From the IMG/VR virus record IMGVR_UViG_3300024239_000013, positions 1-64,000 of that record: a DNA stretch of 64,000 nt; one strand, 5' to 3'. A program made the position numbers and the translations under genes. Numbering within the stretch: the stretch's first letter is position 1; each line of letters opens with the position of its first letter. Of the stretch, positions 5,151 to 53,556 are shown piece after piece. The notes under the pieces are model-generated. The model had not been told where the DNA came from, did not search any database, and worked only from the letters and a program-made list of their open reading frames with translations.

Positions 5151-5378
5151 TTAACAAAATTCTTTTTTTGCTTCCCAAAAATCCTCAGCAGATAGCTTCC
5201 ATCCTTTTTTCTTAGATGCCACGTAAGCCTGTGCATCTTTTAGATTTGGATTGCAGTCATCTTTCTTACATTTTTCAAAGTATGATTTGAGGTCACCGTA
5301 CACTGCTTGACTGATCCCAGTCTTTTCTTGTATTTTGCTTTCGTTAATAAAAGAACTAAATGATTTTATATTTTCCAT
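5151..5378 (-). CDS. Small hypothetical protein with CTS-like N-terminus (MENIKSFSSFINES)
   Basis: Shared N-terminal motif; GATATATA box at 5404-5411. Confidence 0.8.
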   Translation of the reverse strand: MENIKSFSSFINESKIQEKTGISQAVYGDLKSYFEKCKKDDCNPNLKDAQAYVASKKKGWKLSAEDFWEAKKEFC

Positions 5379-37059: not shown

Positions 37060-38140
37060 AGTTAAGACTAAGACTAAGACTAAGACTAAGGTTTCTCTGG
37101 GGAATTTTGGGGAGAATCCCAGAGAGGGCCCGGCCTCCAAATAGATAATAGATATAGTAAAGCTAAGTATACTAAGACTAAGACTAAGTATAAAGCTAAA
37201 GCTAAAGCTAATTAGACTAAGGCTAAGACTAAGACTAAGTATAGACATAGGTATACTAAGAAGACATCCACTATCCAGACTAAGACTAAGACTTGTTCCG
37301 TTCCTAGTTCAGCTAAGAGAACTAATCTGAGTGGTGGGCTCGCGTGCCTCTTGTGGAACCCGGGGCGAGGCGAAGGGTAAAGGGGTACAGAGGGGGTAAA
37401 CGGGGCGATTATCGGGGCGGGGAAATCGGGGCGAGATTCGGGGTCGGACTACGGGGGAAGAAACCAAGTTTTTTTCCAGTTTTTTCCAGTTTTTTCCACT
37501 TCGTTACACTCTGCCAACTTGGTGGGGAAACCCCGGGGGTAAACGGGGATTTCTTAGAATCTCCCAGAAACACCCTGGGTGGTGGGCTCGGCCCTAAAGA
37601 GGGGCTTCCACAAGGGCCCTTTTTACGAGAAAACCCCCGGTTGGATATGGATAAGTACCTGGATACTCTCTGGTTGGGTACGACTAAGTGATAGGGATAC
37701 TCTCTGGTTGGATATGGATAAGTACCTGGATACTCTCTGGTTACGTAACGATTGGGGAATGTGTCTACGTCTCTCTATGTACTAATGACTGAAGCGTCTT
37801 GAATTCCTTACGCGGGTATGCGTCCATGTAGTAACTTACTATCATACTATGTTTCTTTAGATAGTGTGGTTATTGTACTTAGTCTTAGTCTTTCTTATCT
37901 CTTCTCACTCTACTTGACTACTGAGAATTGGTTTGTTATGCTACGTAACTTATCTAGTAGTATAATGAGATAGATGTGGATATTATGCTTACTGTGCATC
38001 ACCCTGGGTAGTCTTAGTCTTAGTCTTAGTCTACCACCTACATTTATGCTTAGCTTTATACTTAGTCTTAGTGACGGAAAATGTATGAGCTATTTGGAGG
38101 CCGGGCCCTCTAGGAGAAAGGAGCCCGAAATCCCCCTCGA
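37060..38140. repeat. ~1.1-kb non-coding element with inverted arms, (ACTAAG)n tracts, a G-run tract and internal direct repeats
   Basis: Perfect inverted repeats 37123-37144/38090-38111 (22 bp) and 37177-37199/38050-38072 (23 bp); GGTTGGATATGGATAAGTACCTGGATACTCTCTGGTT twice (~37639, ~37706). Confidence 0.9.
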
Positions 38141-38667
38141 GCTCTCATTTCACCCAATTGCCTGATCCATGTTAACCGACATGATATAGAATGGATCTTT
38201 TTAAAGTAATATACAGAAAATAAAAGAAACCCATTAAAATTTTTGAGAATTTCAACTCAAATAAATCTGTTGATATGATCTTGATGGTTTCCCCGAGATC
38301 AAAGCGGGGGTGATCGAAAGGACTGGTATGGGATCTTCCTAGAATTGCAGCACTAAAAAGAATCGGAATGCTTTAATGTCGCATTCAGCATTTAATTAAA
38401 AGGCAGGTTGATTCCTGCTTTTTTTGCGCAGATTCCATAGGTCTGAGAGTTTTTATTCAAATTCATATATCACAATAAAACAATCAGTATGGTATTTATT
38501 ATACGCATTCTTAAATGCAGCAAAGTGATTTACAGAAACTCGCTAAAAAAAGATCTCTATGTCTTTATCCTAACAAAAACCGGACAATGTTTTAGAGATA
38601 TATAAAACAGAACAAAATAAAAGGTGAATTGTATAAAAAGGCGGACAATAAAAAAATCCCAAAAAAT

Positions 38668-39495
38668 ATGAGCATTAAGAATTATAAAACATTCATAAGT
38701 GAAAGTTCGGATGCAAGTACACTGACAACTGAACAAATAGATTTCCTTGACAAGTATGTTATCGGTAAATGGCATATGAATGATGATGGATTTGTTGATG
38801 TTGATGGCGTGTTTGATTGTTCTAATAAAGGGATATCTGATTTTAAAGGAATAAAGTTTGGTAATGTTGATAGACATTTTAATTGTGCTGATAACAAATT
38901 AACCTCATTAGAAGGCGGTCCAAAAGAGGTTGGTGGTAGTTTTTATTGTAGTCATAACAAAATAACCTCATTAGAATTTGGTCCGAAAGAAGTTGGTGGT
39001 CATTTTTATTGTAATCATAACAACATAACCTCATTAGAAGGTTGTCCAAAAGAGGTCGGCGGTAGTTTTAATTGTTCGTATAACAACTTAATCTCATTAG
39101 AATTTGGTCCAAAAGAGGTGAAAGGATATTTTAATTGCTCAGATAACAACTTAATCTCATTAGAAGGAGCTCCGAAAGAAGTTGACGGTAGTTTTAATTG
39201 CTCAGATAACAACTTAATCTCATTAGAAGGAGCTCCAATAGAAATTGGGCGGGAATTTTATTTGGATCATAACGAAGGTGCATCAGCAGAAACTCTAAAA
39301 TCGATATACAGTAAAATGAAAGAAGCCAAATCTGATTATAAAACAGTTTTAAAATCTTTATGGAAAGGAATATCAATAGGAGATAAAATACTTTTATACA
39401 CACCAGATCTGGATTGGGTTGAAGAAGATGAAGCGGCTAAATTATATAACCTAAAGAAGTACAATAGCATAAAGAAAATGCTCTATTTCATATAA
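38668..39495 (+). CDS. LRR array paralogue 1 (6 x 21-aa repeats)
   Basis: LTSLEGxPxEVxGxFxCxxN repeats with conserved caps; start re-called to MSIKNYKTFISES. Confidence 0.95.
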   Translation: MSIKNYKTFISESSDASTLTTEQIDFLDKYVIGKWHMNDDGFVDVDGVFDCSNKGISDFKGIKFGNVDRHFNCADNKLTSLEGGPKEVGGSFYCSHNKITSLEFGPKEVGGHFYCNHNNITSLEGCPKEVGGSFNCSYNNLISLEFGPKEVKGYFNCSDNNLISLEGAPKEVDGSFNCSDNNLISLEGAPIEIGREFYLDHNEGASAETLKSIYSKMKEAKSDYKTVLKSLWKGISIGDKILLYTPDLDWVEEDEAAKLYNLKKYNSIKKMLYFI

Positions 39496-39509
39496 TATAA
39501 AGAAGCATA

Positions 39510-40205
39510 ATGAAAAGAATCTCAAATTATAAAACATTCATAAATGAAAGTACAGGTGCAAGTACATTGACTGCAGAACAGATCGATTTCCTTGATAGAT
39601 GTGTTAGAGGAACGTGGAAGCTGAATGATGAAGAATTTGTTGATGTTGATGGGAATTTTGATTGTTTCAATAAAGGAATATCTGACTTTAAAGGAATAAA
39701 GTTTGGTAAGGTTAATGGAGATTTTGATTGTTCATATAATAATTTAAGTTCTTTGGAAGGATGTCCAAAAGAAGTTGTTGGACATTTTGATTGCTCACAT
39801 AACAAATTATCTTCATTAGAATTTGCTCCGGAAAGGGTGAGAAGTAGTTTTTATTGCTCACACAACAACTTAACCTCATTAGAATTTGCTCCGGAAAGGG
39901 TGAAAAATAGTTTTTATTGTCAGAATAACAGCTTAACCTCATTAGATGGGGTTCCTAAAAAAGTTGGAGGATTTTTTTATTTTGATCATAATGAAGGGAT
40001 TTCTTCAGAAACCTTAAAAATGATATCCATCCAAATGAAAGTAATCAAATCTGATTATAAAACAGTTTTAAAATCTTTATGGAGTGAAATACCAGTAGAA
40101 GACAAAGTACTTTTATATTCATCAGATCTAGATTGGGTTGAAGAAGATGAAGGATCTAAATTATCTAATCTAAAGAAGTATAAAAACATAAAGAAAATGA
40201 TCTAA
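39510..40205 (+). CDS. LRR array paralogue 2 (4 repeats)
   Basis: Same caps and repeat. Confidence 0.95.
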   Translation: MKRISNYKTFINESTGASTLTAEQIDFLDRCVRGTWKLNDEEFVDVDGNFDCFNKGISDFKGIKFGKVNGDFDCSYNNLSSLEGCPKEVVGHFDCSHNKLSSLEFAPERVRSSFYCSHNNLTSLEFAPERVKNSFYCQNNSLTSLDGVPKKVGGFFYFDHNEGISSETLKMISIQMKVIKSDYKTVLKSLWSEIPVEDKVLLYSSDLDWVEEDEGSKLSNLKKYKNIKKMI

Positions 40206-40221
40206 TATAATATAAAGCAAC

Positions 40222-41106
40222 ATGATGAAAAGAATCTCGAATTATAAAACATTCATAAACGAAAGCTCGAGTGAAAATAAGCTGACTCAGAAACAACTTG
40301 ATTTTCTTAACAACCACGTTAAGGGATATTGGAAGTTGAATGCTGGAGTTGTTGATGTTGATGGCGATTTTGATTGTTTTAGTAAAGGGATATCAGACTT
40401 TAAAGGAATAGTGTTTGGAAAGGTTAGCGGAGATTTTGATTGCTCACGTAATAATTTAAGTTCTTTAAAAGGTGCTCCTAAAGAGGTTGGTGGACATTTT
40501 GATTGTTCACATAACAACTTAAAATCATTAGAAGGAGCTCCAAAACAGGTTAGTGGAGATTTTGATTGCTCACGTAATAATTTAAGTTCTTTGGAAGGTG
40601 CTCCTAAAGAGGTTGGTGGACATTTCCATTGTTCATACAACAAATTAACATCATTAGAAGGTTGTCCTAAAGAAGTTGGTGGACATTTTTATTGTTATGT
40701 TAACAAATTAACCTCATTAGAATTTGGTCCTAAAGAAGTTGGTGGAGATTTCGATTGCTCTGACAACAAATTAACCTCATTAGAATTTGGTCCCGAAGAG
40801 GTTGGGAGAAGCTTTAATTGCTCAAATAACAAATTAACATCATTAGAAGGAGCTCCTAAAGAAGTTGGTGGAGATTTACGATTTTCTCATAATGAGGGAA
40901 TATCAACCAAAACGATAGGTCTTATATTTGACAAAATGAAAAAGTCCAAATTGGACTATTCTGATGCTTTAAAATCTTTATGGAAAGAAATACCAGTAGA
41001 AGACAAAGTACTTTTATATTCATCAGATCTAGATTGGATTGAAGAAGATGAAGCGTCTAAATTAGTTAAGTTAAAGAAGTATAATAGCATAAAGAAAATG
41101 ATCTAA
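40222..41106 (+). CDS. LRR array paralogue 3 (7 repeats)
   Basis: Same caps and repeat. Confidence 0.95.
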   Translation: MMKRISNYKTFINESSSENKLTQKQLDFLNNHVKGYWKLNAGVVDVDGDFDCFSKGISDFKGIVFGKVSGDFDCSRNNLSSLKGAPKEVGGHFDCSHNNLKSLEGAPKQVSGDFDCSRNNLSSLEGAPKEVGGHFHCSYNKLTSLEGCPKEVGGHFYCYVNKLTSLEFGPKEVGGDFDCSDNKLTSLEFGPEEVGRSFNCSNNKLTSLEGAPKEVGGDLRFSHNEGISTKTIGLIFDKMKKSKLDYSDALKSLWKEIPVEDKVLLYSSDLDWIEEDEASKLVKLKKYNSIKKMI

Positions 41107-41125
41107 TATAATATAAAGAAGCATA

Positions 41126-42010
41126 ATGAAAAGAATCTCAAATTATAAAACATTCATAAACGAAAGCTCGAGTGAAAGTACGCTAACACCTGAACAAATT
41201 AATTTCCTTAACAATTATGTTAAGGGATATTGGAAGTTGAATGCTGATGGAGTTGTTGATGTAGATGGCCATTTTAGTTGTTTCAATAAAGGGTTATCAG
41301 ACTTTAAAGGAATAGTGTTTGGAAAGGTTAATAGAGATTTTGATTGTTCAAACAACAACTTAACCTCATTAGAAGGCTGTCCAAAAAAAGTTGGGGGAGA
41401 TTTTTTTTGTTATGTTAACAAATTAACCTCTTTAAAAGGATCGCCAAAAGAGGTTGGTGGTAGTTTTATTTGTTCAGGTAATAACATAATCACATTGGAA
41501 GATGCACCTAAAAAAACCAGAAGAAGCTTTGATTGCTCACATAATAAATTAACATCATTAGAATTCGGTCCAAAAGAGGTTGGAGGCAATTTTAACTGCT
41601 CGCATAATAAATTAACATCATTAGAAGGTGCTCCTGAAGAAGTTGGTGTGGATTTTTATTGTTATTATAACGAATTGAATAATCTAAAGGGTTCCTCGTA
41701 TGTAGTTGGAAGAGATTTTAACTGCTCGGATAATAAATTAACATCATTAGAAGGAGCTCCAAAAGAAATTGGAGATGATTTCATATTAGAAGATAATGAA
41801 GGTGTTTCTTCAGAAATCTTAAAAGAGATATTTAGAAAAATGTTAGAATCCAAATTGGACTATAAAACAGTTTTAAAATCTTTATGGAAAGAAATCTCAA
41901 TAGAAGATAAAATACTTTTATACACACCAGATCTAGACTGGGTTGAAGAAGATGAAGGGTCCAAATTAGTTAAGCTAAAGAAGTATAGCAACATAAAGAA
42001 AATGATCTAG
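41126..42010 (+). CDS. LRR array paralogue 4 (7 repeats)
   Basis: Same caps and repeat. Confidence 0.95.
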   Translation: MKRISNYKTFINESSSESTLTPEQINFLNNYVKGYWKLNADGVVDVDGHFSCFNKGLSDFKGIVFGKVNRDFDCSNNNLTSLEGCPKKVGGDFFCYVNKLTSLKGSPKEVGGSFICSGNNIITLEDAPKKTRRSFDCSHNKLTSLEFGPKEVGGNFNCSHNKLTSLEGAPEEVGVDFYCYYNELNNLKGSSYVVGRDFNCSDNKLTSLEGAPKEIGDDFILEDNEGVSSEILKEIFRKMLESKLDYKTVLKSLWKEISIEDKILLYTPDLDWVEEDEGSKLVKLKKYSNIKKMI

Positions 42011-42024
42011 TATAAATCAGCATA

Positions 42025-42969
42025 ATGAAAAGAATAATAAATTATAAAACATTCGTAAATGAAAGTTCAGGTGCAAGTACACTGACAACTGAACAAATAG
42101 ATTTCCTTAACAGGTATGTTAGGGGGAAATGGAAGTTGAATGCTGGAGTTGTTGATGTTGATGGCGATTTTGATTGTTTTAGTAAAGGGATATCAGACTT
42201 TAAAGGAATAGTGTTTGGAAAGGTTAGCGGAGATTTTGATTGCTCACGTAATAATTTAAGTTCTTTAAAAGGTGCTCCTAAAGAGGTTGGTGGACATTTT
42301 GATTGTTCACATAACAACTTAAAATCATTAGAAGATGCACCTAAAAAAACTGGACGTAGTTTTTATTGTTCGTATAATAAATTAACCTCATTAGAATTTG
42401 CTCCGGAAAGGGTGAGAAGTAGTTTTCATTGTCAGAATAACAGCTTAACCTCATTAGAAGGAGCTCCTAAAGAAGTTGGAGGGTATTTCGATTGCTCAAG
42501 CAACAACTTAACCTCATTAGAAGGAGCTCCAAAAGAGATTGGGTATGATTTCGATTGCTCACACAACAACTTAACCACATTAGAAGGCTGTCCAAAAGAA
42601 ATTGTTGAAGATTTCGATTGCTCACACAACAACTTAACCACATTGGAATTCTCTCCAGAGAAAGTTGGTGTTAATTTTTATTGCTTCAATAACAACTTAA
42701 TTTCATTAAAAGGAGCTCCAAAAGAGATTGGATATGATTTCATATTAAAAAATAATGAAGGAGCATCATCAGAAATCTTAAAAGAGATATTTAGAAAAAT
42801 GTTAGAATCCAAATTGGACTACTCTGATGTTTTAAAATCCCTTTGGGATGAAATACCAATAAAAGATAAAATAGTTCTATATACCCCTGATCTAGACTGG
42901 GTTGAAGAAGATGAAGCGTCTAAATTATCTAAGTTAAAGAAGTATAGCAACATAAAGAAAATGATCTAG
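42025..42969 (+). CDS. LRR array paralogue 5 (8 repeats; mosaic)
   Basis: Same caps and repeat; blocks identical to paralogues 2, 3, 4, 6 and 7. Confidence 0.95.
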   Translation: MKRIINYKTFVNESSGASTLTTEQIDFLNRYVRGKWKLNAGVVDVDGDFDCFSKGISDFKGIVFGKVSGDFDCSRNNLSSLKGAPKEVGGHFDCSHNNLKSLEDAPKKTGRSFYCSYNKLTSLEFAPERVRSSFHCQNNSLTSLEGAPKEVGGYFDCSSNNLTSLEGAPKEIGYDFDCSHNNLTTLEGCPKEIVEDFDCSHNNLTTLEFSPEKVGVNFYCFNNNLISLKGAPKEIGYDFILKNNEGASSEILKEIFRKMLESKLDYSDVLKSLWDEIPIKDKIVLYTPDLDWVEEDEASKLSKLKKYSNIKKMI

Positions 42970-42983
42970 TATAAATCAGCATA

Positions 42984-43868
42984 ATGAAAAGAATAATAAA
43001 TTATAAAACATTCGTAAATGAAAGTTCAGGTGCAAGTACACTGACAACTGAACAAATAGATTTCCTTAACAGGTATGTTAGGGGGAAATGGAAGTTGAAT
43101 AATGATGGGGTTGTTGATGTAGATGGGGATTTTAATTGTTTTAATAAAGGGTTATCAGACTTTAAAGAAATAAAATTTGGAAAAGTTACAGGATATTTTG
43201 ATTGCTCTAAGAACAACTTAACCTCATTAGAGGGTTCACCAAAAAAAGTTGGTGTAGATTTTTATTGTAGTCATAACAAATTAACCTCATTAGAAGGAGC
43301 GCCTATAGAAGTTTATAGAAGTTTCGATTGCAAGGGTAACAAATTAACCTCGTTAGAATTCGGTCCAAAAAAGGTGGAGGGAAATTTTATTTGTTCAATT
43401 AACAAATTAACCTCGTTAGAATTCGGTCCAAAAGGAGTTCCTGGAACTTTCAATTGTTCATTTAACAAATTAACCTCGTTAGAATTCGGTCCAAAAGAAG
43501 TCGGAAGTAGTTTTAATTGCTCATTTAACAACTTAACCTCATTAGAATTCTCTCCAGAGAAAGTTGATGTTGATTTTTATTGCTCGAATAATAAATTAAC
43601 ATCATTAGAAGGTGTCCCAAAAGAAATTGGTGGATATTTCTGGTGTTCTTATAATGTTGGACTATCGACAGATATAATAAATCTTATATTCAGAAAAATG
43701 ATAAAGTATAGATCTGATTATAAAACAGTTTTAAAATCTTTATGGAAAGAAATCTCAATAGAAGACAAGATACTTTTATATTCATCAGATCTAGATTGGA
43801 TTGAAGAAGATGAAGCGGCTAAATTAGCTAAGTTAAAGAAGTATAGCAACATAAAGAAAATGATCTAG
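42984..43868 (+). CDS. LRR array paralogue 6 (7 repeats)
   Basis: Same caps and repeat. Confidence 0.95.
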   Translation: MKRIINYKTFVNESSGASTLTTEQIDFLNRYVRGKWKLNNDGVVDVDGDFNCFNKGLSDFKEIKFGKVTGYFDCSKNNLTSLEGSPKKVGVDFYCSHNKLTSLEGAPIEVYRSFDCKGNKLTSLEFGPKKVEGNFICSINKLTSLEFGPKGVPGTFNCSFNKLTSLEFGPKEVGSSFNCSFNNLTSLEFSPEKVDVDFYCSNNKLTSLEGVPKEIGGYFWCSYNVGLSTDIINLIFRKMIKYRSDYKTVLKSLWKEISIEDKILLYSSDLDWIEEDEAAKLAKLKKYSNIKKMI

Positions 43869-43882
43869 TATAAATCAGCATA

Positions 43883-44830
43883 ATGAAAAGAATAATAAAT
43901 TATAAAACATTCATAAACGAAAGCTCGAGTGAAAATAACTTGACACCTGAACAGATATATTTCCTGAACAAGCAGATTAAGGGGAAATGGAAGTTGAATG
44001 CTGATGGGGTTGTTGATGTTGTTGGAAATATCCATTGTTCACATAGAGAAATATCGGACTTCAAGGGAATAAAATTCGGAAAAGTTACTGGGTATTTTGA
44101 TTGCTCAAATAACAACTTAACATCATTAGAGGGTTGTCCAAAAGAGGTTGGTGGACATTTTTATTGTTCATATAACAGCTTAACATCATTAGAGGGTTGT
44201 CCAAAAGAGGTTGGGGGACATTTTTATTGTCAACGTAACAACTTAACCTCATTAGAAGGTGGTCCAGAAAGAGTGAATGGAGATTTCATTTGTTATGGTA
44301 ACAAATTAGCTTCATTAGAATTTGGACCCAAGGAGGTTAGAGGTACTTTCGATTGCTCAAATAACAAATTAACATCCTTAGAAGGATGCTCTAAAGAGGT
44401 GAATGGAGATTTCGATTGCACATATAACAAATTAACATCATTAGAATTCTCTCCAGTTAAAGTTGGTGGTACTTTCGATTGTTCAGATAATAACTTAACC
44501 TCATTAGAATTTGGACCTGAAGATGTTGGGGGAGGCTTTAATTGTTCCCGTAATAAATTAACCTCATTAGAAGGAGCTCCTAAAGAAGTTGGAGGTACTT
44601 TACGATGTTTTTATAATGAGGGTTTATCAAACGAAACAATAGGTCTTATATTTGAAAAAATGATAAAATCCAGATTGGATTATAAAACAGTTTTAAAATC
44701 TTTATGGGGAGAAATACCAATAAAAGATAAAATAGTTCTATATACCCCTGATCTGGATTGGGTTGAAGGAGATGAAGCGGCTAAATTATCTAATCTAAAG
44801 AAGTATAGCAACATAAAGAAAATGATCTAA
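43883..44830 (+). CDS. LRR array paralogue 7 (8 repeats)
   Basis: Same caps and repeat. Confidence 0.95.
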   Translation: MKRIINYKTFINESSSENNLTPEQIYFLNKQIKGKWKLNADGVVDVVGNIHCSHREISDFKGIKFGKVTGYFDCSNNNLTSLEGCPKEVGGHFYCSYNSLTSLEGCPKEVGGHFYCQRNNLTSLEGGPERVNGDFICYGNKLASLEFGPKEVRGTFDCSNNKLTSLEGCSKEVNGDFDCTYNKLTSLEFSPVKVGGTFDCSDNNLTSLEFGPEDVGGGFNCSRNKLTSLEGAPKEVGGTLRCFYNEGLSNETIGLIFEKMIKSRLDYKTVLKSLWGEIPIKDKIVLYTPDLDWVEGDEAAKLSNLKKYSNIKKMI

Positions 44831-44846
44831 TATAATATAAAAAAAC

Positions 44847-45794
44847 ATGATGAAAAGAATAGTAAATTATAAAACATTCATAAACGAAAGCTCTGGTGAA
44901 AATAACCTGACCCCAGAACAAATTGATTTCCTTAACAACTATGTTAAGGGGAAATGGAAGTTTAATGTTGGAGTTGTTGATATTGATGGCGATTTTAGTT
45001 GTTTCGATAGAGGAATATCTGACTTTAAAGGAATAGTGTTTGGAAGGGTTACCGGTCATTTTGACTGTTCGGATAACAACTTAACATCATTAGAAGGTTG
45101 TCCAAAAGAGGTTGGTGGAAATTTTTATTGTCATTATAACAACTTAACCTCATTAGAAGGTTGTCCAAAAGAGGTTGGCGGACATTTTTATTGTCATTAT
45201 AACAACTTAACATCATTAGAAGGTTGTCCAAAAAAAGTGAATGGAGATTTCGATTGCACAGATAACAACTTAACCTCATTAGAATTCGGTCCAAAAGAGA
45301 TTAATGGACATTTTTATTGTTATGATAACAGCTTAACCTCATTAGAATTTGGTCCCGAAAGAGTGAATGGAGATTTTGATTGTTCGAATAACAACTTAAC
45401 CTCATTAGAATTTGGACCCAAAGAGGTTGGTGGTACTTTCGATTGCTCACGTAATAACTTAAGCTCGTTAGAAGGTGTTCCTGAAAAGCTGAACGGAGTT
45501 TTTTATTTCTCATGTAACAAATTAACCTCATTAGAAGGTGCTCCTAAAAAACTAGGATCACAATTTTTTTGTGAGAATAATGAAGGGATATCAACCAAAA
45601 CGATAAATCTTATATTTGACAAAATGGAAACCTCCAAATCTGATTATAAAACAGTTTTAAAATCTTTATGGAAAGAAATACCAATAGAAGATAAAATACT
45701 TTTATACACCCCAGATCTTGATTGGGTTGAAGAAGATGAAGGGTCTAAATTAGCTAAGTTAAAGAAGTATAGCAACATAAAGAAAATGATCTAA
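44847..45794 (+). CDS. LRR array paralogue 8 (8 repeats)
   Basis: Same caps and repeat. Confidence 0.95.
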   Translation: MMKRIVNYKTFINESSGENNLTPEQIDFLNNYVKGKWKFNVGVVDIDGDFSCFDRGISDFKGIVFGRVTGHFDCSDNNLTSLEGCPKEVGGNFYCHYNNLTSLEGCPKEVGGHFYCHYNNLTSLEGCPKKVNGDFDCTDNNLTSLEFGPKEINGHFYCYDNSLTSLEFGPERVNGDFDCSNNNLTSLEFGPKEVGGTFDCSRNNLSSLEGVPEKLNGVFYFSCNKLTSLEGAPKKLGSQFFCENNEGISTKTINLIFDKMETSKSDYKTVLKSLWKEIPIEDKILLYTPDLDWVEEDEGSKLAKLKKYSNIKKMI

Positions 45795-45812
45795 TATAAT
45801 ATAAAGAGCACA

Positions 45813-46508
45813 ATGAAAAGAATAGTAAATTATAAAACTTTCATAAATGAAAGTGCAGGTGCAAGTACACTGACTTCAGAACAGATAGATTTCCTTAACA
45901 ACTATGTTAAGGGGAAATGGAAGCTGAATGGTGAAGGATTTATTGATATAGATGGTGATTTTAGTTGTTTCGATAAAGGGTTATCAGACTTTAGATGGAT
46001 AAAATTTGGAAAAGTTACAGGGTATTTTTATTGTTCATATAATGGATTGACATCATTAGAGGGAGCACCAAAAAAAGTTGGTTTGAGTTTTTATTGTCAT
46101 AATAACAAATTAACATCATTGGATGGCTCTCCTAAAGAGATTGGTGGAAATTTCGATTGCTCTGACAACAAATTAACCTCATTAGAATTCTCACCCGAAA
46201 GTGTAAAGGGGAGCTTTGATTGCTCATATAACAACTTAACATCATTAGAATTTGGTCCTAAAGAAGTTGGCGGAGATTTACGATTTTCTCATAATGAGGG
46301 ATTGTCAACCAAAACGATAGGTCTTATATTTGACAAAATGGAAAAGTCCAAATTGGACTATAAAACAGTTTTAAAATCTTTATGGAAAGAAATACCAATA
46401 GAAGATAAAATACTTTTATACAATGCGGATCTAGATTGGATTGAAGGAGATGAAGCGGCTAAATTAGCTAAGTTGAATAAATATAGCAACATAAAGAAAA
46501 TGATCTAA
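45813..46508 (+). CDS. LRR array paralogue 9 (4 repeats)
   Basis: Same caps and repeat. Confidence 0.95.
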   Translation: MKRIVNYKTFINESAGASTLTSEQIDFLNNYVKGKWKLNGEGFIDIDGDFSCFDKGLSDFRWIKFGKVTGYFYCSYNGLTSLEGAPKKVGLSFYCHNNKLTSLDGSPKEIGGNFDCSDNKLTSLEFSPESVKGSFDCSYNNLTSLEFGPKEVGGDLRFSHNEGLSTKTIGLIFDKMEKSKLDYKTVLKSLWKEIPIEDKILLYNADLDWIEGDEAAKLAKLNKYSNIKKMI

Positions 46509-46527
46509 TATAATATAAAGAAACATA

Positions 46528-47412
46528 ATGAAAAGAATAGTAAATTATAAAGCATTCATAAACGAAATCTCGAGTGAAAATAACTTGACACCAGAACAGA
46601 TAGATTTCCTTAACAGGTATGTTGAGGGGAAATGGAAGTTGAATGCTGATGGAGCTGTTGATGTAGATGGCGATTTTAGTTGTTTCGATAAAGGGTTATC
46701 AGACTTTAAAGGAATAGTGTTTGAGAAGATTAGTGGAGATTTTGACTGTTCGGCTAACAGCTTAATATCATTAGAAGGTTGTCCAAAAGAGGTTAATGGA
46801 TATTTTTATTGTCATTATAACAAACTAACCTCATTAGAATTTGGTCCTGAAAGTGTAGATGGAGATTTCGATTGTTCGAATAACAATTTAACTTCATTAG
46901 AATTTGGACCCAAAGAGGTTGGTGGAAATTTTGACTGTTCATACAACAAATTAACCTCATTAGAAGTCTGTCCAAAAAAAGTTGGGGGAACTTTCAATTG
47001 TTCATTTAATAAATTAACATCATTAGAATTCAGTCCAAAAGAGGTTGGTGGTAGTTTCAATTGCTCATTTAACAACTTAACATCGTTGCAATTCTCTCCA
47101 GAGAAAGTTGATGCTTATTTTCATTGTTCAAATAACAACTTAACCTCATTAGAAGGGGTATCAAAAGAAGTTGGAGGGAATTTAAGATGTTTTTATAATG
47201 AAGGGCTATCAACCGAAACAATAAATCTTATATTTGACAAAATGATAAAGTCCAAATTGGACTATTCTGATGCTTTAAAATCTTTATGGAAAGAAATACC
47301 AGTAGAAGACAAAGTACTTTTATACACACCCGATCTAGATTGGGTTGAAGAAGACGAAGCGTCTAAATTAGCTAAGCTAAAGAAGTATAGCAGCATAAAG
47401 AAAATGATCTAG
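46528..47412 (+). CDS. LRR array paralogue 10 (7 repeats)
   Basis: Same caps and repeat. Confidence 0.95.
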   Translation: MKRIVNYKAFINEISSENNLTPEQIDFLNRYVEGKWKLNADGAVDVDGDFSCFDKGLSDFKGIVFEKISGDFDCSANSLISLEGCPKEVNGYFYCHYNKLTSLEFGPESVDGDFDCSNNNLTSLEFGPKEVGGNFDCSYNKLTSLEVCPKKVGGTFNCSFNKLTSLEFSPKEVGGSFNCSFNNLTSLQFSPEKVDAYFHCSNNNLTSLEGVSKEVGGNLRCFYNEGLSTETINLIFDKMIKSKLDYSDALKSLWKEIPVEDKVLLYTPDLDWVEEDEASKLAKLKKYSSIKKMI

Positions 47413-47426
47413 TATAAAGAAGAATA

Positions 47427-48374
47427 ATGAAAAGAATAGTAAATTATAAAACTTTTATAAACGAAAGTTCAGGTGCAAGTACACTGACAACTGAACAGAT
47501 AGATTTCCTTAACAGGTATGTTAAGGGGAAATGGAAGTTGAATGATAATGGAGTTGTTGATGTTGATGGTGATTTTAGTTGTTCCGATAAAGAAATATCA
47601 GACTTTAAAGGAATAATATTTGGAAAAGTTACCGGTCATTTCTATTGCTCAAGTAACAACTTAAGATCATTAGAAGGTTGTCCCAAAGAGGTTGGAGGGG
47701 GTTTCAATTGCTCACGTAATGAATTAACATCATTGGAAGGTTGTCCAGAAAGGGTGAATGGAGATTTCATTTGTTATGGTAACAACTTAACCTCATTAGA
47801 AGGTTGTACAGAAAGAGTGAATGGAGATTTCATTTGTTCGGCTAACAACTTAACCTCATTAGAAGGCTGCCCTAAGGAAGTTGAGGGATTTTTCAATTGT
47901 TCATTTAATAAATTAGCTTCTTTAGAAGGATGTCCTGGAGAAATTGGAAGTAGTTTTTATTGTTCGTATAACAAATTAACCTCATTAGAATTTGGCCCAG
48001 AAATGGTGAATGGAGATTTCGTTTGTTCAGATAACAAATTAACCTCGTTAGAATTCAGTCCAAAAGAAGTTGGTGGTAATTTTATTTGTTCAGATAACAA
48101 CTTAACATCATTAGAGGGAATATCAAAAAAAGTTGGGGGATCTTTATGGTGTTCTTCTAATGAAGGACTATCAACCGAAACGATAGATCTTATATTTGAT
48201 AAAATCATAAAGTTCAAATTGGACTATTTGGATGCTTTAAATTTTTTATGGGAGGATATCCCAATAGAAGATAAAGTACTTTTATACACACCCGATTTAG
48301 ATTGGATTGAAGGAGAGGAAGCGGTTAAATTATCTAATCTAAAGAAGTATAGTAAAATAAAGAAAATGATATAA
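47427..48374 (+). CDS. LRR array paralogue 11 (8 repeats)
   Basis: Same caps and repeat. Confidence 0.95.
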   Translation: MKRIVNYKTFINESSGASTLTTEQIDFLNRYVKGKWKLNDNGVVDVDGDFSCSDKEISDFKGIIFGKVTGHFYCSSNNLRSLEGCPKEVGGGFNCSRNELTSLEGCPERVNGDFICYGNNLTSLEGCTERVNGDFICSANNLTSLEGCPKEVEGFFNCSFNKLASLEGCPGEIGSSFYCSYNKLTSLEFGPEMVNGDFVCSDNKLTSLEFSPKEVGGNFICSDNNLTSLEGISKKVGGSLWCSSNEGLSTETIDLIFDKIIKFKLDYLDALNFLWEDIPIEDKVLLYTPDLDWIEGEEAVKLSNLKKYSKIKKMI

Positions 48375-48418: not shown

Positions 48419-48877
48419 ATGAGATATATTCAACTTTACGAGAACTTCTCGGTATTAAATGAGACTACCATTGATAGATTTAGTCCTGATGTTATTAGAG
48501 GTCAAGATGCAATCGATTCTCAATTTTTTAATAAATTGATGCCAAAAACAGCAAAAACAACATCAGAAGCTCAGAACAGGATATTATCATTTTCTGGCGG
48601 TACTATGTTTGTACATTATCAATACTTCATTGTTACACCAAAGGGAAATACCCCCGATAGACCTATTTATAGAATACATAATAGCCAATATTGGTTAAAT
48701 GACTACCAATTAATTAGGCAGGGTAAAAATGGACAGGATGTAAACGTAACCGAGATTTACATAACCGACATTACAGATCCCAAAAACGAGATTAGACTCG
48801 GATCGGTTTATGTTGATACTAGAATTTATTTAGATGAACAAAAAATTGTTTTTGATGTACTCAAGAGTCATTCATAA
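48419..48877 (+). CDS. Hypothetical protein with CTS-like N-terminus (MRYIQLYENFSVLNE)
   Basis: Shared N-terminal motif. Confidence 0.8.
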   Translation: MRYIQLYENFSVLNETTIDRFSPDVIRGQDAIDSQFFNKLMPKTAKTTSEAQNRILSFSGGTMFVHYQYFIVTPKGNTPDRPIYRIHNSQYWLNDYQLIRQGKNGQDVNVTEIYITDITDPKNEIRLGSVYVDTRIYLDEQKIVFDVLKSHS

Positions 48878-49495: not shown

Positions 49496-49771
49496 ATGAA
49501 AAACATAAAACTATATGAAAATTTCATTAACGAAAAAATTTCATCCGAAGCTGTTTATATTCACAATATAACCGGTGCTGGACAACAATCTATTCAAAAC
49601 TTTATTGACGACAATAATATAGACGCTGATAAATTAGCGGAATATGTGAAAGTAAATAAGGATCATAAAGAAAAGTATGATGTAAGAGATATGATTTCAG
49701 GAACTGGACTAGGATCAGATAAAAATAGAAGAGAAAATTTTATTAAAAAATTCAAGAGAGGTAAAAAATAG
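49496..49771 (+). CDS. Small protein with CTS-like N-terminus (MKNIKLYENFINE)
   Basis: Shared N-terminal motif. Confidence 0.8.
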   Translation: MKNIKLYENFINEKISSEAVYIHNITGAGQQSIQNFIDDNNIDADKLAEYVKVNKDHKEKYDVRDMISGTGLGSDKNRRENFIKKFKRGKK

Positions 49772-49839: not shown

Positions 49840-50802
49840 ATGACAGAAGAAAAACTTTTTAGATGGACTAATTATTCAGTAAAGTCACTAGAAAATTTAA
49901 TTGAAGGGATGGAAAAACATCATCCGGAAGATTATAAAAAGATAAAGGAAATAAGTGATCGTTTACTATTGTATTATAGGGGAGATAATATATTAACAGA
50001 AAAACAAAAAAATACTCTAGATTCTTTATCTAAAGATTGGTACATATCACCAGAAAACGGAGGGGTTAATATTGGATATATGTATGCTTCGGATTGGGGA
50101 TTATCCATTAAAAATTATTGGGAAGAGGATACGGAATCTGCGAGAAAAAAAAGACTAAAGCTTTTTGAGGATCTTAAAAAAATAAAATTTAATGAGGTTT
50201 ATTCTCTTTCTTTGAGATCGTGTGGATTAGAAGAATTTTGGCCAAATATGCCAAAAAGAACTTCTAGATTTGATTGTTCCTATAATAAGATAGAAAGTCT
50301 AGTTGGAGGTCCAGAATATGCTAGTGAATACGATTTCTGTGGGAATAATATTAAAAGCTTTGATGGGTTACCTGACAATGTTAAAGAATTAGATTGCAGT
50401 CATAACCCAATAGAGGATTTTTCAACCCTAAAAGTTAAAGAATTATTAAGGTTTAGATGTCGGGATACACATATAAAAAATCTAATAGGTTGTCCTAAAG
50501 TTACAACCTTTTTAGACGTATCAGGATGTAAGTTAACCTCAGTTGAAGGAGCCCCGTTAAATTTAACCTTAAGAGAGGTTAATTTTGGGGAAAATGTGGT
50601 TAGTGAAAAAACATTAAAACTTGCTTTCAATGCAATGAAAAAAGCTAAAGGAGATTATGGTAAAGGATTGGATAAAATATGGAAAAAAATACCTATAGAA
50701 GACCAAATACAAATGTATAAGGACAATCCAAATCTTACTAATGATGAGGTAAAAAAATATTACAATTTAAAAAAATATTTTGATATAAAAACTTTTATAT
50801 AA
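49840..50802 (+). CDS. Divergent LRR protein related to the array, lacking the CTS-like N-terminus
   Basis: FDCSYNKIESLVGGP-type repeats; C-cap VSEKTL...DY...L..IWK.IPIED...LKKY; class II promoter. Confidence 0.85.
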   Translation: MTEEKLFRWTNYSVKSLENLIEGMEKHHPEDYKKIKEISDRLLLYYRGDNILTEKQKNTLDSLSKDWYISPENGGVNIGYMYASDWGLSIKNYWEEDTESARKKRLKLFEDLKKIKFNEVYSLSLRSCGLEEFWPNMPKRTSRFDCSYNKIESLVGGPEYASEYDFCGNNIKSFDGLPDNVKELDCSHNPIEDFSTLKVKELLRFRCRDTHIKNLIGCPKVTTFLDVSGCKLTSVEGAPLNLTLREVNFGENVVSEKTLKLAFNAMKKAKGDYGKGLDKIWKKIPIEDQIQMYKDNPNLTNDEVKKYYNLKKYFDIKTFI

Positions 50803-51327: not shown

Positions 51328-52131
51328 ATGAAAAAAATAGCATCATTTAATGAGTTTGTAAATGAGGATAACGGGCTTCTAGGACACATAGCTCCATTAT
51401 TGGGTAGCATTGAAATAGATGGTAAAAAAAAAGCAGAGGAAATTAGAAGCCAGGATACAGGTTCTGAGATTGATCAAGGTGATCTTTTACCGTCCGATTT
51501 TAATCCATTTCCAGGTAATGATGATTTCACTCTTTATATGCAACATCAGCAAGGAGTAGCTGGAGCAAAGGGATTAATAGAAGCATCTTTAGGAACTGGT
51601 AAATTAGCATCAGATACGATCAAAACCAAGAATGGTAAAAAATATGCAAATTTAATTTCAAATGTTCCTAGCGACAAACCTCAAATTAAAAATTCCATAA
51701 TAAAAGCATTAGACTCGGGTGATCAAAAAACTGCATCGGTTTTATTCCTAAATATGTGGAAGGAAAAATGGAACCGAGCATATAAAGATGCAAAGATCGA
51801 AATAGAAAAGCCACAAAACTCTACTGCTAAATCAGCTATAAAAAAATACAGTTCAGCATATGGGGTTCCTTTTGATTTTGCTATAACCGTAGCAAAATTG
51901 GAATCCGGATTTAAGCCTAATGTAGGAAACAATACCTATAAAGGATTATTTGCTCTAAGTCAAAATGGATTTAATAAATATGTTCCTGGAGGAAATATTT
52001 TTAACCCAGATGATAATGCTAAAGCAGGAATTCAAAGTCTAAGAGATAATATAAAAGAATTCAAAAAACAACTAGGTGATAAAACTCTAGCCTCTCTTAA
52101 TATTGCTCAATGGGCAAAAAATATAGCTTAA
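51328..52131 (+). CDS. SLT-type lytic transglycosylase with CTS-like N-terminus
   Basis: AKLESGFKP, YKGLF, FNPDDNAKAG; MKKIASFNEFVNE. Confidence 0.8.
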   Translation: MKKIASFNEFVNEDNGLLGHIAPLLGSIEIDGKKKAEEIRSQDTGSEIDQGDLLPSDFNPFPGNDDFTLYMQHQQGVAGAKGLIEASLGTGKLASDTIKTKNGKKYANLISNVPSDKPQIKNSIIKALDSGDQKTASVLFLNMWKEKWNRAYKDAKIEIEKPQNSTAKSAIKKYSSAYGVPFDFAITVAKLESGFKPNVGNNTYKGLFALSQNGFNKYVPGGNIFNPDDNAKAGIQSLRDNIKEFKKQLGDKTLASLNIAQWAKNIA

Positions 52132-53199: not shown

Positions 53200-53556
53200 A
53201 TGGAAAAAATGATAAAAAATTACAATAATTTTATTAATGAGTCCAAAAAAGAATCTTTTGAAGAGTTTTCTTTAATTAGATTAAACGGGGCTAAAAAAAT
53301 AGCAGAAAATGCTAAAGAAAAAGGTGGTGATGCTCTACTTACTTACCATCATTTTAAAGTTAAGATACCAACTTATAAAAAAGCTAAAGATGGTGAATTT
53401 GATATGATAAATTCTAAAAAAGAATATGAAACCCTTTTAGAAAAATTATATAAATCAACCAAGGATAATATGAAAATAAGCCAAGTTGAATTTCAGGAAT
53501 TGGTTGGTAGAATAGAAGTATTAGGAGAACTTATTATCAGAAAGGAGATAGAATAA
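53200..53556 (+). CDS. Hypothetical protein with CTS-like N-terminus (MIKNYNNFINES)
   Basis: Shared motif; GATATATA at 53188. Confidence 0.8.
   Translation: MEKMIKNYNNFINESKKESFEEFSLIRLNGAKKIAENAKEKGGDALLTYHHFKVKIPTYKKAKDGEFDMINSKKEYETLLEKLYKSTKDNMKISQVEFQELVGRIEVLGELIIRKEIE

What the first reader, a model, noticed from the sequence alone, without database searches (positions are those of the whole stretch)
40330..42969. DNA-level cassette shuffling between LRR paralogues (paralogue 5 is a patchwork of at least five others)
Seen: 42130-42334 is identical to 40330-40534 (205 bp, paralogue 3). The intergenic plus 5' ~150 bp of paralogue 5 matches paralogue 6. GAAGATGCACCTAAAAAAAC at 42331 matches paralogue 4 (41498). 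The EFAPERVRSSF and CQNNSLTSL blocks match paralogue 2. The SEILKEIFRKMLESKLDY block (~42769-42821) matches paralogue 4 (~41810-41862). EIPIKDKIVLYTPDL matches paralogue 7. Paralogues 6/10 and 3/9 share other blocks. Several junctions fall in the conserved TTAAC(C/A)TCATTAGAA framework. Inference: repeat modules are exchanged by gene conversion or recombination rather than arising by simple duplication and drift.
Basis: seen in the sequence. Interest (0 to 1): 0.8.

Follow-up and report, generated by a model that had tools for sequence, protein, structure and literature searches.

The report
Recombining LRR gene array in huge phage
A 319-kb phage genome carries eleven side-by-side genes for small leucine-rich-repeat proteins that have repeatedly swapped DNA with one another, which gives the phage a varied set of protein-binding modules that may be carried in the virion and injected into the host.

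Summary
Window 38668-48374 holds 11 tandem, same-strand paralogues. Each encodes a 13-15 aa leader, an N-cap, 4-8 LRR units of 21 aa, and a 79-aa helical C-cap.

Paralogue 5 (42025-42969) shares exact tracts with three neighbours:
- 131 bp with P6 (166 bp counting the preceding gene's 3' end)
- 205 bp with P3
- 53 bp with P4

It also has weaker but significant blocks with P2 and P7. Background synonymous divergence between paralogues is about 0.35.

One duplication tree is rejected. N-cap and C-cap distances are uncorrelated (r=-0.13). AU tests reject each region's tree on the other's data (6.5e-7, 5.5e-9). PHI gives p<0.001, and GENECONV-type runs are globally significant.

Related phage contigs reuse the same blocks at 96-100% identity in other combinations. 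They also differ by whole 63-bp units and in gene content.

So ectopic recombination or gene conversion is supported. Two points in the finding did not hold up:
- Junctions are not enriched in the LTSLE framework.
- Exchange tracts do not follow repeat-unit boundaries.

Short-read contigs could not bridge the repeats, so single-molecule proof is missing.

A new lead: the leader resembles the T4 capsid-targeting sequence and is shared by eight unrelated genes in this genome, which has a T4-type head protease. The proteins may therefore be packaged and injected.

The parts
38668..39495 (+). P1: LRR paralogue with 6 units and a C-cap 3 aa longer than the others. An upstream TTG at 38629 is an alternative start.
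39510..40205 (+). P2: 231 aa, 4 units. Its core is 100% identical over 247 bp to gene 2 of the related phage contigs L012 and L016.
40222..41106 (+). P3: 294 aa, 7 units. Units 1 and 3 are 60/63 identical, which points to an internal two-unit duplication.
41126..42010 (+). P4: 294 aa, 7 units. Its orthologue in L013 is 96% identical over 722 bp.
42025..42969 (+). P5: 314 aa, 8 units. It is the most mosaic member, with 12 painted segments.
42984..43868 (+). P6: 294 aa, 7 units.
43883..44830 (+). P7: 315 aa, 8 units. Its orthologue in L013 is 96-99% identical.
44847..45794 (+). P8: 315 aa, 8 units.
45813..46508 (+). P9: 231 aa, 4 units.
46528..47412 (+). P10: 294 aa, 7 units.
47427..48374 (+). 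P11: 315 aa, 8 units.
42130..42334 (+). 205-bp tract in P5 identical to P3 40330-40534. It covers the end of the N-cap, unit 1 and most of unit 2.
40330..40534 (+). The P3 copy of the 205-bp tract.
41976..42141 (+). 166-bp tract identical to 42935-43100. It spans the last 35 bp of one gene, the 14-bp spacer and the first 117 bp of the next gene.
42935..43100 (+). Second copy of the 166-bp tract, at the P5/P6 boundary.
42130..42141 (+). 12-bp overlap where P3, P5 and P6 are all identical. This is the junction between the P6-type and P3-type parts of P5. The 18 junction-spanning 31-mers occur once in the genome.
42769..42821 (+). 53-bp exact block shared with P4 41810-41862, in the C-cap.
42850..42893 (+). 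44-bp exact block shared with P7 44711-44754.
42382..42480 (+). 99-bp block 93% identical to P2 39870-39968.
40941..41018 (+). 78-bp exact block shared by P3 and P10 (47247-47324).
45645..45708 (+). 64-bp exact block shared by P8 and P9 (46359-46422).
42025..42069 (+). Leader codons 1-15 of P5 (MKRIINYKTFVNESS). The same kind of leader starts all 11 genes, and the model has pLDDT <50 across it.
49840..50802 (+). P12: a distant LRR relative with a different N-terminal part and a C-cap about 40% identical. It takes no part in the exchanges.

Best explanation
The array is a family of 11 intact, probably co-transcribed genes for short bacterial-type LRR proteins, in a huge phage with a T4-type head.

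**How the array evolves.** The genes evolve by repeated ectopic homologous recombination between paralogues. Three kinds of change are seen:
- short-tract gene conversion or template switching of 20-205 bp
- in-frame gain and loss of 63-bp units
- unequal exchange that changes gene content

Homology for these events comes from the conserved leader and N-cap, the 3' end plus spacer, and the repeat framework. P5 is the most recent product. It has a P6-type 5' end, a P3-type block and a P4-type C-cap block with no mismatches, plus older P2-type and P7-type blocks.

**What varies in the proteins.** Amino-acid variation is concentrated at repeat positions 1, 3, 5 and 8. These positions flank the invariant Phe4, Cys6 and Asn9. 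By the general knowledge of LRR structure (the x positions of LxxLxLxxN), they lie on the concave binding face. Recombination therefore re-sorts binding surfaces.

**Shown and inferred.**
- Shown: the mosaic structure, the rejection of a single tree, the gene architecture, and the fold class.
- Inferred: that the exchange happens between phage genome copies during replication, which recombinase performs it, and that selection for diverse targets keeps the variants.

**Likely role.** The likely role is protein binding inside the host. The T4-CTS-like leader suggests the proteins may be packaged in the head and injected.
For: **Exact tracts in diverged genes**
- Exact tracts of 205, 166, 78, 64 and 53 bp sit in genes that are otherwise 70-88% identical.
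- Background pS is 0.35-0.53.

**Tests against a single tree**
- N-cap and C-cap distances: r=-0.13.
- AU tests: 6.5e-7 and 5.5e-9.
- PHI: p<0.001. GENECONV-type global p<=0.01 for P5-P6, P3-P5, P3-P10, P4-P5 and P8-P9.

**Independent assemblies of relatives**
- They reuse the same blocks in other contexts.
- L012 and L016, from two samples, agree on a gene 2 made of the P2 core (247 bp at 100%, 162 bp at 99%) minus one unit, with different ends.
- In L013 a P4 orthologue (96%) is followed directly by a P7-type gene.
- L012 and L016 are otherwise identical but differ at repeat-unit level: one extra 63-bp unit in gene 1, and 155 bp against 66 bp in gene 3.

**Genes are functional**
- Orthologous segments have pN/pS of 0.1-0.5.
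- Variation is concentrated at repeat positions 1, 3, 5 and 8. pN/pS is 0.82 at hypervariable codons against 0.28 at the others.

**Fold and generality**
- The AF2 model has pLDDT 91. The nearest solved folds are the YopM, IpaH and SspH LRR domains.
- The same kind of array occurs in other large phage contigs: 12 genes in L001 and 13 in L002. In both, end-to-end distances are uncorrelated (r=-0.16 and -0.18). In L001, exact matches of up to 131 bp lie in shifted register.
Against: - All the genomes compared are short-read metagenome assemblies.
- The public contigs laid on the region are 150-540 bp pieces, so no molecule was seen to span the 205-bp or 166-bp repeat.
- A k-mer-consistent alternative path would swap the parts of P3 and P5 downstream of the 205-bp tract. 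The mosaic would remain but its details would change.
- Bubble collapsing by an assembler could make 98-99% identity look like 100%.
- No phage recombinase was recognised: RecA and AAA_25 gave only sub-threshold hits, and RecT and Rad51 gave none.
- pN/pS at hypervariable codons is below 1, so positive selection is not demonstrated.
- Part of the pattern may come from exchange between related phages rather than within one genome.
Confidence: 0.85

Rival explanations
1. The mosaic is an assembly artefact. A short-read metagenome assembler threaded reads from different paralogues, or from co-occurring strains, into chimeric genes.
For: - The genome is a metagenome contig.
- Repeats of 166 and 205 bp exceed common k-mer sizes.
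- L012 and L016 disagree on unit numbers, and L012 gene 3 is out of frame. This is the kind of error assemblers make in tandem repeats.
- The laid contigs do not bridge the repeats.
Against: - P3 and P6 share only 12 bp at the P6-to-P3 junction of P5, and its 18 junction 31-mers are unique. A de Bruijn graph could not create that join without reads that contain it.
- Runs X2, X4 and X20 (another study) hold both sampled words of the 60-bp junction stretch. Only 2 words were sampled, so this is weak support.
- Any path through the same k-mer graph still gives a gene with a P6-type 5' end joined to the P3-type block.
- Incongruence between the N-cap and C-cap affects all 11 genes, not only the repeat borders.
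- The L012 and L016 assemblies agree with each other on the mosaic of gene 2.
Confidence: 0.06
2. The pattern is simple tandem duplication followed by independent drift. Shared blocks reflect conserved framework positions and uneven constraint.
For: - The framework is strongly conserved, so short identical runs arise by chance. The 20-mer shared by P4 and P5 is matched by 15 of 2478 same-phase windows.
- Painting of diverged paralogues gives several segments even where identity is only 72-85%.
Against: - Tests restricted to polymorphic sites still give global p<=0.01 for five pairs.
- PHI gives p<0.001.
- AU tests reject a common tree.
- Distances at the two gene ends are uncorrelated.
- A 205-bp tract with no synonymous difference stands against pS of about 0.35.
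Confidence: 0.02
3. The main source of mosaicism is exchange between different but related phages during co-infection, that is, recombination between arrays of different genomes. On this view, conversion inside one genome contributes little.
For: - The P2 core is 100% identical over 247 bp to L012 and L016, while the flanking sequence is 88-96% identical. This implies recent transfer between lineages.
- Related arrays differ in gene content.
- The family is abundant in the same samples: some loose ends are absent from this genome.
Against: - Exchange between aligned arrays cannot by itself make two different genes of one genome identical over 205 bp. That requires misaligned (ectopic) pairing, whichever molecules take part.
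- Phage DNA is present in many copies in a cell, so the two routes cannot be separated with these data.
Confidence: 0.3
4. The variation comes from a dedicated diversification device: a diversity-generating retroelement, a shufflon-type invertase system, or silent cassettes feeding one expression site.
For: - Hypervariable codons are about 92% NNT, which faintly recalls AAY-templated mutagenesis.
- Variation is focused on a few positions per repeat.
Against: - The genome has no reverse transcriptase.
- All 11 genes are complete, lie on the same strand, and each has its own start codon. There is no silent-cassette or inversion layout.
- Shared tracts are copied blocks, not adenine-specific changes.
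Confidence: 0.02

Closest known systems
Tandem LRR gene clusters that evolve by unequal crossing-over and gene conversion. Examples are plant NLR and receptor-like clusters such as RPP8 (PMC6771003) and, from my own knowledge, the Listeria internalin gene clusters.
   Same: Both have tandem paralogues with variable numbers of LRR units, sequence exchange between paralogues, variation focused on solvent-exposed repeat positions, and gene-number differences between close relatives.
   Different: Here the carrier is a bacteriophage. The proteins are small (231-315 aa), made only of LRRs plus caps, with no NB-ARC, kinase, signal peptide or cell-wall anchor. The genes are 14-19 bp apart in what looks like one operon.
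T-even phage internal proteins Ip1-3 and their polymorphic loci (PMC3012670, PMC12373910, PMC8442874).
   Same: - The N-terminal leader is Y-x-x-F-I-x-E, ending in Glu, against the T4 CTS MKTYQEFIAE.
- The leader is shared by otherwise unrelated proteins of the same phage.
- The genome has a T4-type prohead protease and a gp23-type capsid protein.
- The locus varies between relatives.
- In T4 these proteins are injected and each blocks one variant of a host defence enzyme.
   Different: - Packaging, cleavage and injection were not shown here.
- T4 Ips are unrelated small basic proteins rather than an LRR family.
- The leader here is 3-4 residues longer.
Head paralogue families of giant phages, for example SPN3US paralogue family B, with 20 members against 2 in phiKZ (PMC5694885).
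   Same: Both are large gene families of variable size in phages with genomes over 200 kb and T4-related prohead proteases. In SPN3US the members are head proteins, some of them with propeptides cut after Glu.
   Different: There is no sequence relation to those families. Virion location is unknown here. Recombination between members was not the subject of that work.
LRR domains of the YopM, IpaH, SspH and SlrP class.
   Same: The repeats are 20-22 residues long, and these are the best structural matches to the model (Foldseek E 2e-4 to 1e-3, TM up to 0.63 by target).
   Different: There is no NEL ligase domain and no type III secretion context. Sequence identity is only 19-27%, and the caps differ. 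The similarity is one of fold class, not of family.
Lamprey variable lymphocyte receptor assembly.
   Same: In both, LRR segments are copied between genes using short homology in the framework, which produces combinatorial binders.
   Different: VLR assembly is somatic and programmed, and it fills an incomplete germline gene from silent cassettes. Here all the genes are complete and the exchange is evolutionary.

Membership tests
Ectopic gene conversion / recombination in a tandem multigene family | Long identical tracts embedded in clearly diverged flanks, beyond what site conservation explains | tested here: met
   Exact tracts of 205, 166, 78, 64 and 53 bp are present. Permutation of polymorphic sites gives global p<=0.01 for five pairs. 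Background pS is 0.35.
Ectopic gene conversion / recombination in a tandem multigene family | Different parts of the genes support different trees | tested here: met
   r=-0.13 between N-cap and C-cap distances. AU p=6.5e-7 and 5.5e-9. PHI p<0.001.
Ectopic gene conversion / recombination in a tandem multigene family | The mosaic exists on single DNA molecules and is not an assembly product | tested here: inconclusive
   The laid contigs are too short to bridge the repeats. The junction 31-mers are unique, and P3 and P6 share only 12 bp at the junction. Two sampled junction words are held by runs X2, X4 and X20.
Ectopic gene conversion / recombination in a tandem multigene family | Non-reciprocal transfer with an identifiable donor and recipient | not testable with these tools
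   No outgroup copy of the 205-bp tract was found in L012, L013 or L016.
Bacterial-type short LRR proteins (structural class of YopM/IpaH/SspH) | Repeat unit of 20-22 residues with an L..L.L..N.L-type core, and an LRR solenoid fold | tested here: met
   There are 74 units of exactly 21 aa with invariant F4, N9 and L14 and near-invariant C6 and L11. Pfam LRR_4 scores above its cut-off. The model has pLDDT 91, and the top PDB matches are YopM, IpaH3 and SspH1/2.
IpaH/SspH NEL-type E3 ligase effectors | C-terminal NEL ubiquitin-ligase domain | tested here: not met
   The protein ends in a 79-aa helical cap, and Pfam gives only LRR hits.
T4-type capsid-targeted internal (injected) proteins | Short N-terminal leader resembling MKTYQEFIAE, ending in Glu, and shared by unrelated proteins of the phage | tested here: met
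   All 11 genes start MKRIxNYKTFINE-S or a near variant. The strict motif [YF]xxF[ILV]NE has 20 hits in 538 ORFs, and 18 of them begin 5-8 residues after the initiator Met (zero-based offsets 5-8). Eight of those are non-LRR proteins, including a CHAP and an SLT hydrolase. The T4 sequence is taken from PMC8442874.
T4-type capsid-targeted internal (injected) proteins | Phage has a T4-type prohead protease and capsid | tested here: met
   Peptidase_S77 scores 33.8 bits against a cut-off of 27, at 277.6 kb. Gp23 scores 138.5 bits at 274-276 kb.
T4-type capsid-targeted internal (injected) proteins | Leader is cleaved, and the protein is present in virions and delivered to the host | not testable with these tools
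   This needs virion proteomics. The only indirect hint is that leader residues 1-15 are predicted to be disordered.
Diversity-generating retroelement targets | Reverse transcriptase plus a template repeat with adenine-specific differences | tested here: not met
   RVT_1 has no match in the 319-kb genome. The shared tracts are identical copies.
Silent-cassette or VLR-type programmed assembly | One expressed or incomplete gene plus promoterless partial cassettes | tested here: not met
   All 11 copies are full-length ORFs with start codons, caps and stop codons.

The most novel reading that the evidence does not exclude
Huge phages with T4-type heads keep recombining tandem arrays of LRR proteins that carry a capsid-targeting leader. 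On this reading the proteins are loaded into the head, trimmed after the leader's Glu, and injected with the DNA. Each variant binds, and probably blocks, a different variant of a host defence or other host protein. Ectopic recombination between the paralogues continually makes new binding surfaces. This would be a viral counterpart of LRR-based immune receptor diversification, and an LRR version of the T-even internal-protein arsenal.
Probability: 0.25. Interest if true: 0.8.

Novelty: new variant of a known kind. Interest (0 to 1): 0.58.

Why it matters
Sequence exchange in tandem LRR families is a classic route to new recognition specificities in plants, animals and some bacteria. In the literature I could search I found no description of such exchange in bacteriophages.

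Here it appears in a 319-kb phage, and similar arrays of 12-13 genes occur in other large phage contigs. This suggests a widespread, unannotated class of phage host-interaction proteins: more than 5800 database relatives, all labelled 'hypothetical'.

If the T4-like leader really directs packaging, the arrays would be a large new set of injected proteins. The leader motif would then give a simple way to predict the injected proteome of uncultivated huge phages.

For genome scanning, the case is also a caution. Such arrays are where short-read assemblies are least reliable.

Tried and rejected
1. **Laying public contigs on 39500-45400.**
   - The pieces were too short to bridge the repeats.
   - I first read several 'joints' at depth about 40 as a co-existing variant. 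One search showed that their letters belong to P1 and P11, which lie outside the laid stretch, so I withdrew that idea.
   - Other loose ends come from LRR genes of other phages in the samples.

2. **Junction-specific run search.** Only 2 words were sampled, so the support is weak.

3. **Exact searches of IMG/VR for the two P5 junctions.** No other record holds them.

4. **Metagenome scan for more arrays.** It returned only the window's own contig and one 1-kb fragment.

5. **megablast of the array against GenBank phages.** No match.

6. **Recombinase search.** Nothing scored above the cut-offs.

7. **Reverse transcriptase / DGR.** Absent.

8. **Rfam and tRNA scans of the upstream non-coding region.** Nothing found.

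9. **Enrichment of junctions in the LTSLE framework.** Not found.

10. **Promoter and terminator scan of the array.** Promoter-like sites were not above chance, and there was no convincing internal terminator.

11. **PHI on 150-bp ends of the L001 and L002 arrays.** Not significant, because there were few informative sites. The script stopped with an error before it listed the longest exact matches for L002, so the 131-bp figure applies to L001 only.

12. **Pfam scan of longer relatives.** No informative fused domain.
Full report
**What is there**

The window is the first 64 kb of a single 319,334-bp virus contig from a subsurface metagenome. CheckV rates it complete. The genome has a gp23-type major capsid protein and a T4-type prohead protease. 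The window also carries a phage sigma factor, a tail lysozyme and other phage families.

From 38668 to 48374 lie eleven genes on the + strand, 14-19 bp apart. All have the same plan:
- a 13-15 residue leader
- an N-cap, which brings the N-terminal part to 67-68 residues
- four to eight repeats of exactly 21 residues (63 bp)
- a 79-residue helical C-cap

tblastn finds no further member in the genome apart from a distant relative at 49840-50802.

Pfam sees only LRR_4. An AlphaFold model built on 18 family sequences has mean pLDDT 91.3, and only residues 1-15 are unstructured. Its closest solved folds are the LRR domains of YopM, IpaH3 and SspH1/2. Its closest viral models are LRR proteins of giant viruses and uncultured tailed phages. 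This shows a shared fold class, not family membership, because there is no NEL domain.

**Checking the observation**

- The 205-bp match between P3 (40330-40534) and P5 (42130-42334) is exact and maximal.
- The match between the 5' ends of P5 and P6 is 131 bp: 14 bp of spacer plus 117 coding bases. It continues 35 bp upstream into the preceding genes, giving 166 exact bases, 41976-42141 = 42935-43100.
- P4 and P5 share 53 exact bases in the C-cap.
- P5 and P7 share 44 exact bases.
- P2 and P5 share 99 bp at 93%.
- The 20-mer at 42331 recurs only at 41498.
- Elsewhere, P3/P10 share 78 exact bases and P8/P9 share 64.

**Is it more than chance?**

Repeat units are on average 44/63 identical (sd 4.2), and only 11 of 2701 unit pairs reach 56/63. 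Synonymous divergence between paralogues is about 0.35 in the caps and 0.53 in the repeats. Exact tracts of 50-200 bp are therefore far outside the background.

I permuted only the polymorphic columns of the cap alignments, which removes the effect of conserved sites. The longest concordant runs remain globally significant for five pairs:

| Pair | Global p |
|---|---|
| P5-P6 | <0.0005 |
| P3-P5 | 0.002 |
| P3-P10 | 0.0005 |
| P4-P5 | 0.004 |
| P8-P9 | 0.01 |

- P5-P7 is significant pairwise only, p=0.0002.
- The P2-P5 block exceeds all 1218 same-phase windows.
- The 20-mer alone is weak, since 15 of 2478 windows are equally identical.

P5 therefore has three robust partners (P6, P3, P4), two moderately supported ones (P2, P7) and one doubtful block.

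**One tree or many?**

- Pairwise identities in the N-cap and in the C-cap are uncorrelated: r=-0.13, Mantel p=0.74. Nearest neighbours differ for every gene.
- Maximum-likelihood trees of the two regions conflict, and each data set rejects the other's tree: AU p=6.5e-7 and 5.5e-9.
- The pairwise homoplasy index is below all 1000 permutations in both regions.

**Relatives**

The family is large, and the ESM Atlas clusters nearest to P5 are 100% viral. More than 5800 database proteins pass E<=0.001, and none carries a functional name. Only a few contigs carry the same caps.

- **L012 and L016.** L012 is a 46.8-kb contig. L016 is a 4.4-kb contig from another sample, assembled separately. They are the same phage at 100% identity. 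They are syntenic with the window upstream of the array at 88-99% identity.
  - Their gene 2 is the P2 core (247 bp at 100%, then 162 bp at 99%) with one 63-bp unit missing and with different 5' and 3' ends.
  - Their gene 1 is P1 with units removed and one duplicated.
  - The two contigs differ from each other only at unit level, and gene 3 of L012 is out of frame.
- **L013.** This 4.7-kb contig holds five genes. A P4 orthologue at 96% over 722 bp is followed directly by a gene that is P7-like at 96-99% with a P3-type insert. P5 and P6 have no counterpart there.

The same sequence blocks therefore occur in different combinations in related phages. Arrays differ by whole units and in which genes they hold.

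Orthologous segments show pN/pS of 0.1-0.5, so the genes are under purifying selection and are functional.

Comparable arrays occur in unrelated large phage contigs: 12 genes in L001 and 13 in L002, each array with its own conserved leader. In both, end-to-end distances are uncorrelated. L001 has exact matches of up to 131 bp in shifted register.

**Where the variation sits**

Across the 74 units:
- F4, N9 and L14 are invariant, and C6, L11, S13 and P18 are nearly so.
- Positions 1, 3, 5 and 8 have 2.2-3.2 bits of entropy.
- In the model the short strand falls on positions 4-5.
- By the general rule for LRR proteins, the residues flanking the core positions of the strand form the concave binding face.
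- Uncorrected pN/pS is 0.82 at the six most variable codons, against 0.28 at the others. This suggests relaxed or diversifying pressure, but values below 1 are not proof of positive selection.

**Junctions**

I mapped each painted junction to the stretch where both donors match. Across 48 junctions, 25% of the junction density falls in the 18 framework bases that encode N-L-T-S-L-E, against 29% expected. The framework remark holds for some P5 junctions but is not a general rule. In addition, junctions can only be placed where no informative site exists, which favours conserved stretches.

The strongest recent junction, P6-type to P3-type at 42130-42141, lies in the N-cap, not in a repeat. Exchange tracts also include the caps and the spacer, so they are not repeat 'cassettes' in a strict sense.

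**Assembly artefact?**

This could not be settled with reads.
- The public data for the source study are k=31 contigs of 150-540 bp that break at the repeats.
- The apparent alternative joints turned out to be P1 and P11, which lie outside the laid stretch.

Three arguments speak against an artefact:
- At the P6-to-P3 junction, P3 and P6 share only 12 bases, and the 18 junction 31-mers are unique in the genome. No k-mer graph could make this join unless reads contain it.
- The only k-mer-consistent alternative path swaps the downstream parts of P3 and P5 and leaves the mosaic in place.
- The incongruence affects all eleven genes, and two independent assemblies agree on the mosaic of the relative's gene 2.

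Runs X2, X4 and X20 hold both sampled words of the 60-bp junction stretch, but two words is thin evidence. I put the artefact reading at about 6%.

**Mechanism**

The best reading is ectopic homologous recombination among paralogues on the many genome copies in an infected cell. It produces short conversion tracts, unit gain and loss, and occasional gene gain or loss.
- The three mismatch-free tracts in P5 could stem from one event with several template switches, or from several recent conversions. The P2-type and P7-type blocks (91-93%) are older.
- Exchange between related phages also contributes, as the 100% identical P2 core in L012 and L016 shows. It cannot by itself make two genes of one genome identical.
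- A dedicated device is unlikely. There is no reverse transcriptase, all copies are complete, and all lie on one strand.
- No phage recombinase was recognised, so the enzyme is unknown.

**A lead on function**

All eleven proteins start MKRI-x-NYKTFINE-S or a near variant. The strict motif [YF]xxF[ILV]NE occurs 20 times in the genome's 538 ORFs. Eighteen of those hits begin 5-8 residues after the initiator Met (offsets as printed). Eight of them are on unrelated proteins, among them a CHAP and an SLT peptidoglycan hydrolase. More distant family members start MK[YH]LKTYQLFEA and similar.

- The T4 capsid targeting sequence is MKTYQEFIAE. It directs the internal proteins into the prohead and is removed by the prohead protease. 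The mature proteins are injected, and each blocks one variant of a host restriction enzyme (PMC8442874, PMC3012670, PMC12373910).
- Giant phages also carry head paralogue families of very variable size (PMC5694885).
- This genome has the T4-type protease and capsid.
- The model leaves exactly residues 1-15 unstructured.

This supports, but does not prove, that the LRR proteins are packaged and injected. I give the full chain about 25%.

**Comparison and novelty**

Exchange between tandem LRR paralogues is well known in plant resistance clusters (for example PMC6771003) and, from my own knowledge, in the Listeria internalin genes. LRR segment copying is the basis of lamprey receptor assembly. 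I found no description of such arrays in bacteriophages. The literature treats phage LRR proteins as rare curiosities (PMC10945359).

I therefore rate this a new variant of a known kind. It is of moderate interest as it stands, and of high interest if the injected-repertoire reading holds.

The frameshift in gene 3 of L012 is only described.

Noticed in passing
window 5151-5378(-), 26833-27630, 48419-48877, 49496-49771, 51328-52131, 53200-53556; genome 172567(-), 186452(-), 204663(-): A shared N-terminal leader of the type K-x-[YF]-x-x-F-[ILV]-N-E sits on at least eight proteins unrelated to the LRR family. They include a CHAP hydrolase and an SLT peptidoglycan hydrolase. Of the 20 strict-motif hits in 538 ORFs, 18 begin 5-8 residues after the initiator Met (offsets as printed). 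The leader resembles the T4 capsid targeting sequence.
   Followed up: partly
window 37060-38115: A non-coding element of about 1 kb with 43% GC in a genome of about 31% GC.
- It is bounded by imperfect inverted repeats built of (TAAGAC)n.
- It contains internal direct repeats.
- It lies at the switch of coding strand and at the minimum of cumulative GC skew.
- It is 88-99% conserved in L012 and L016.
- It has no Rfam match.

It may be a replication origin or an unknown structured element.
   Followed up: partly
L016:4264-4432 and the end of L012: In the related phage, the fifth array gene stops after 38 codons. It is followed by the C-terminal zinc-ribbon part of a TnpB-like ORF. A 58%-identical relative lies at about 194.6 kb in this genome.
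   Followed up: no
L012:11365-12398 versus L016:2488-3432: Two assemblies of the same phage are 100% identical except for repeat-unit-level differences in genes 1 and 3. Gene 3 is out of frame in L012 and intact (314 aa) in L016. This is either real population variation or an assembly error in the tandem repeats.
   Followed up: no
L001:2397-11370 and L002:2022-12298: Other large phage contigs (184 and 192 kb) carry 12 and 13 tandem LRR genes with 3-12 repeats each. Each array has its own invariant leader (MKLQELFLKEE..., MEILKTEQYINEKL...). L001 has exact matches of up to 131 bp in shifted register.
   Followed up: partly
window 38869-48134 (LRR units): At the hypervariable repeat positions 3, 5 and 8, about 92% of codons end in T (mostly GAT, TAT, AAT and CAT). 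In the caps the T share of NAY codons is 78%, and at the invariant F4, C6 and N9 codons it is 23-69%. The cause is unexplained.
   Followed up: no
window 38403-38427: A terminator-like hairpin followed by a T run lies in the 460-bp non-coding stretch just upstream of the array. It could end a small transcript from 38270-38427. Rfam has no match.
   Followed up: no
C-cap codons for D-Y-K-T versus D-Y-S-D, e.g. window 42815-42835: A dimorphic three-codon patch (YKT or YSD/YLD) is scattered among the paralogues. The P4 orthologue in L013 carries the other form than P4 does. This looks like very short patch exchange.
   Followed up: no
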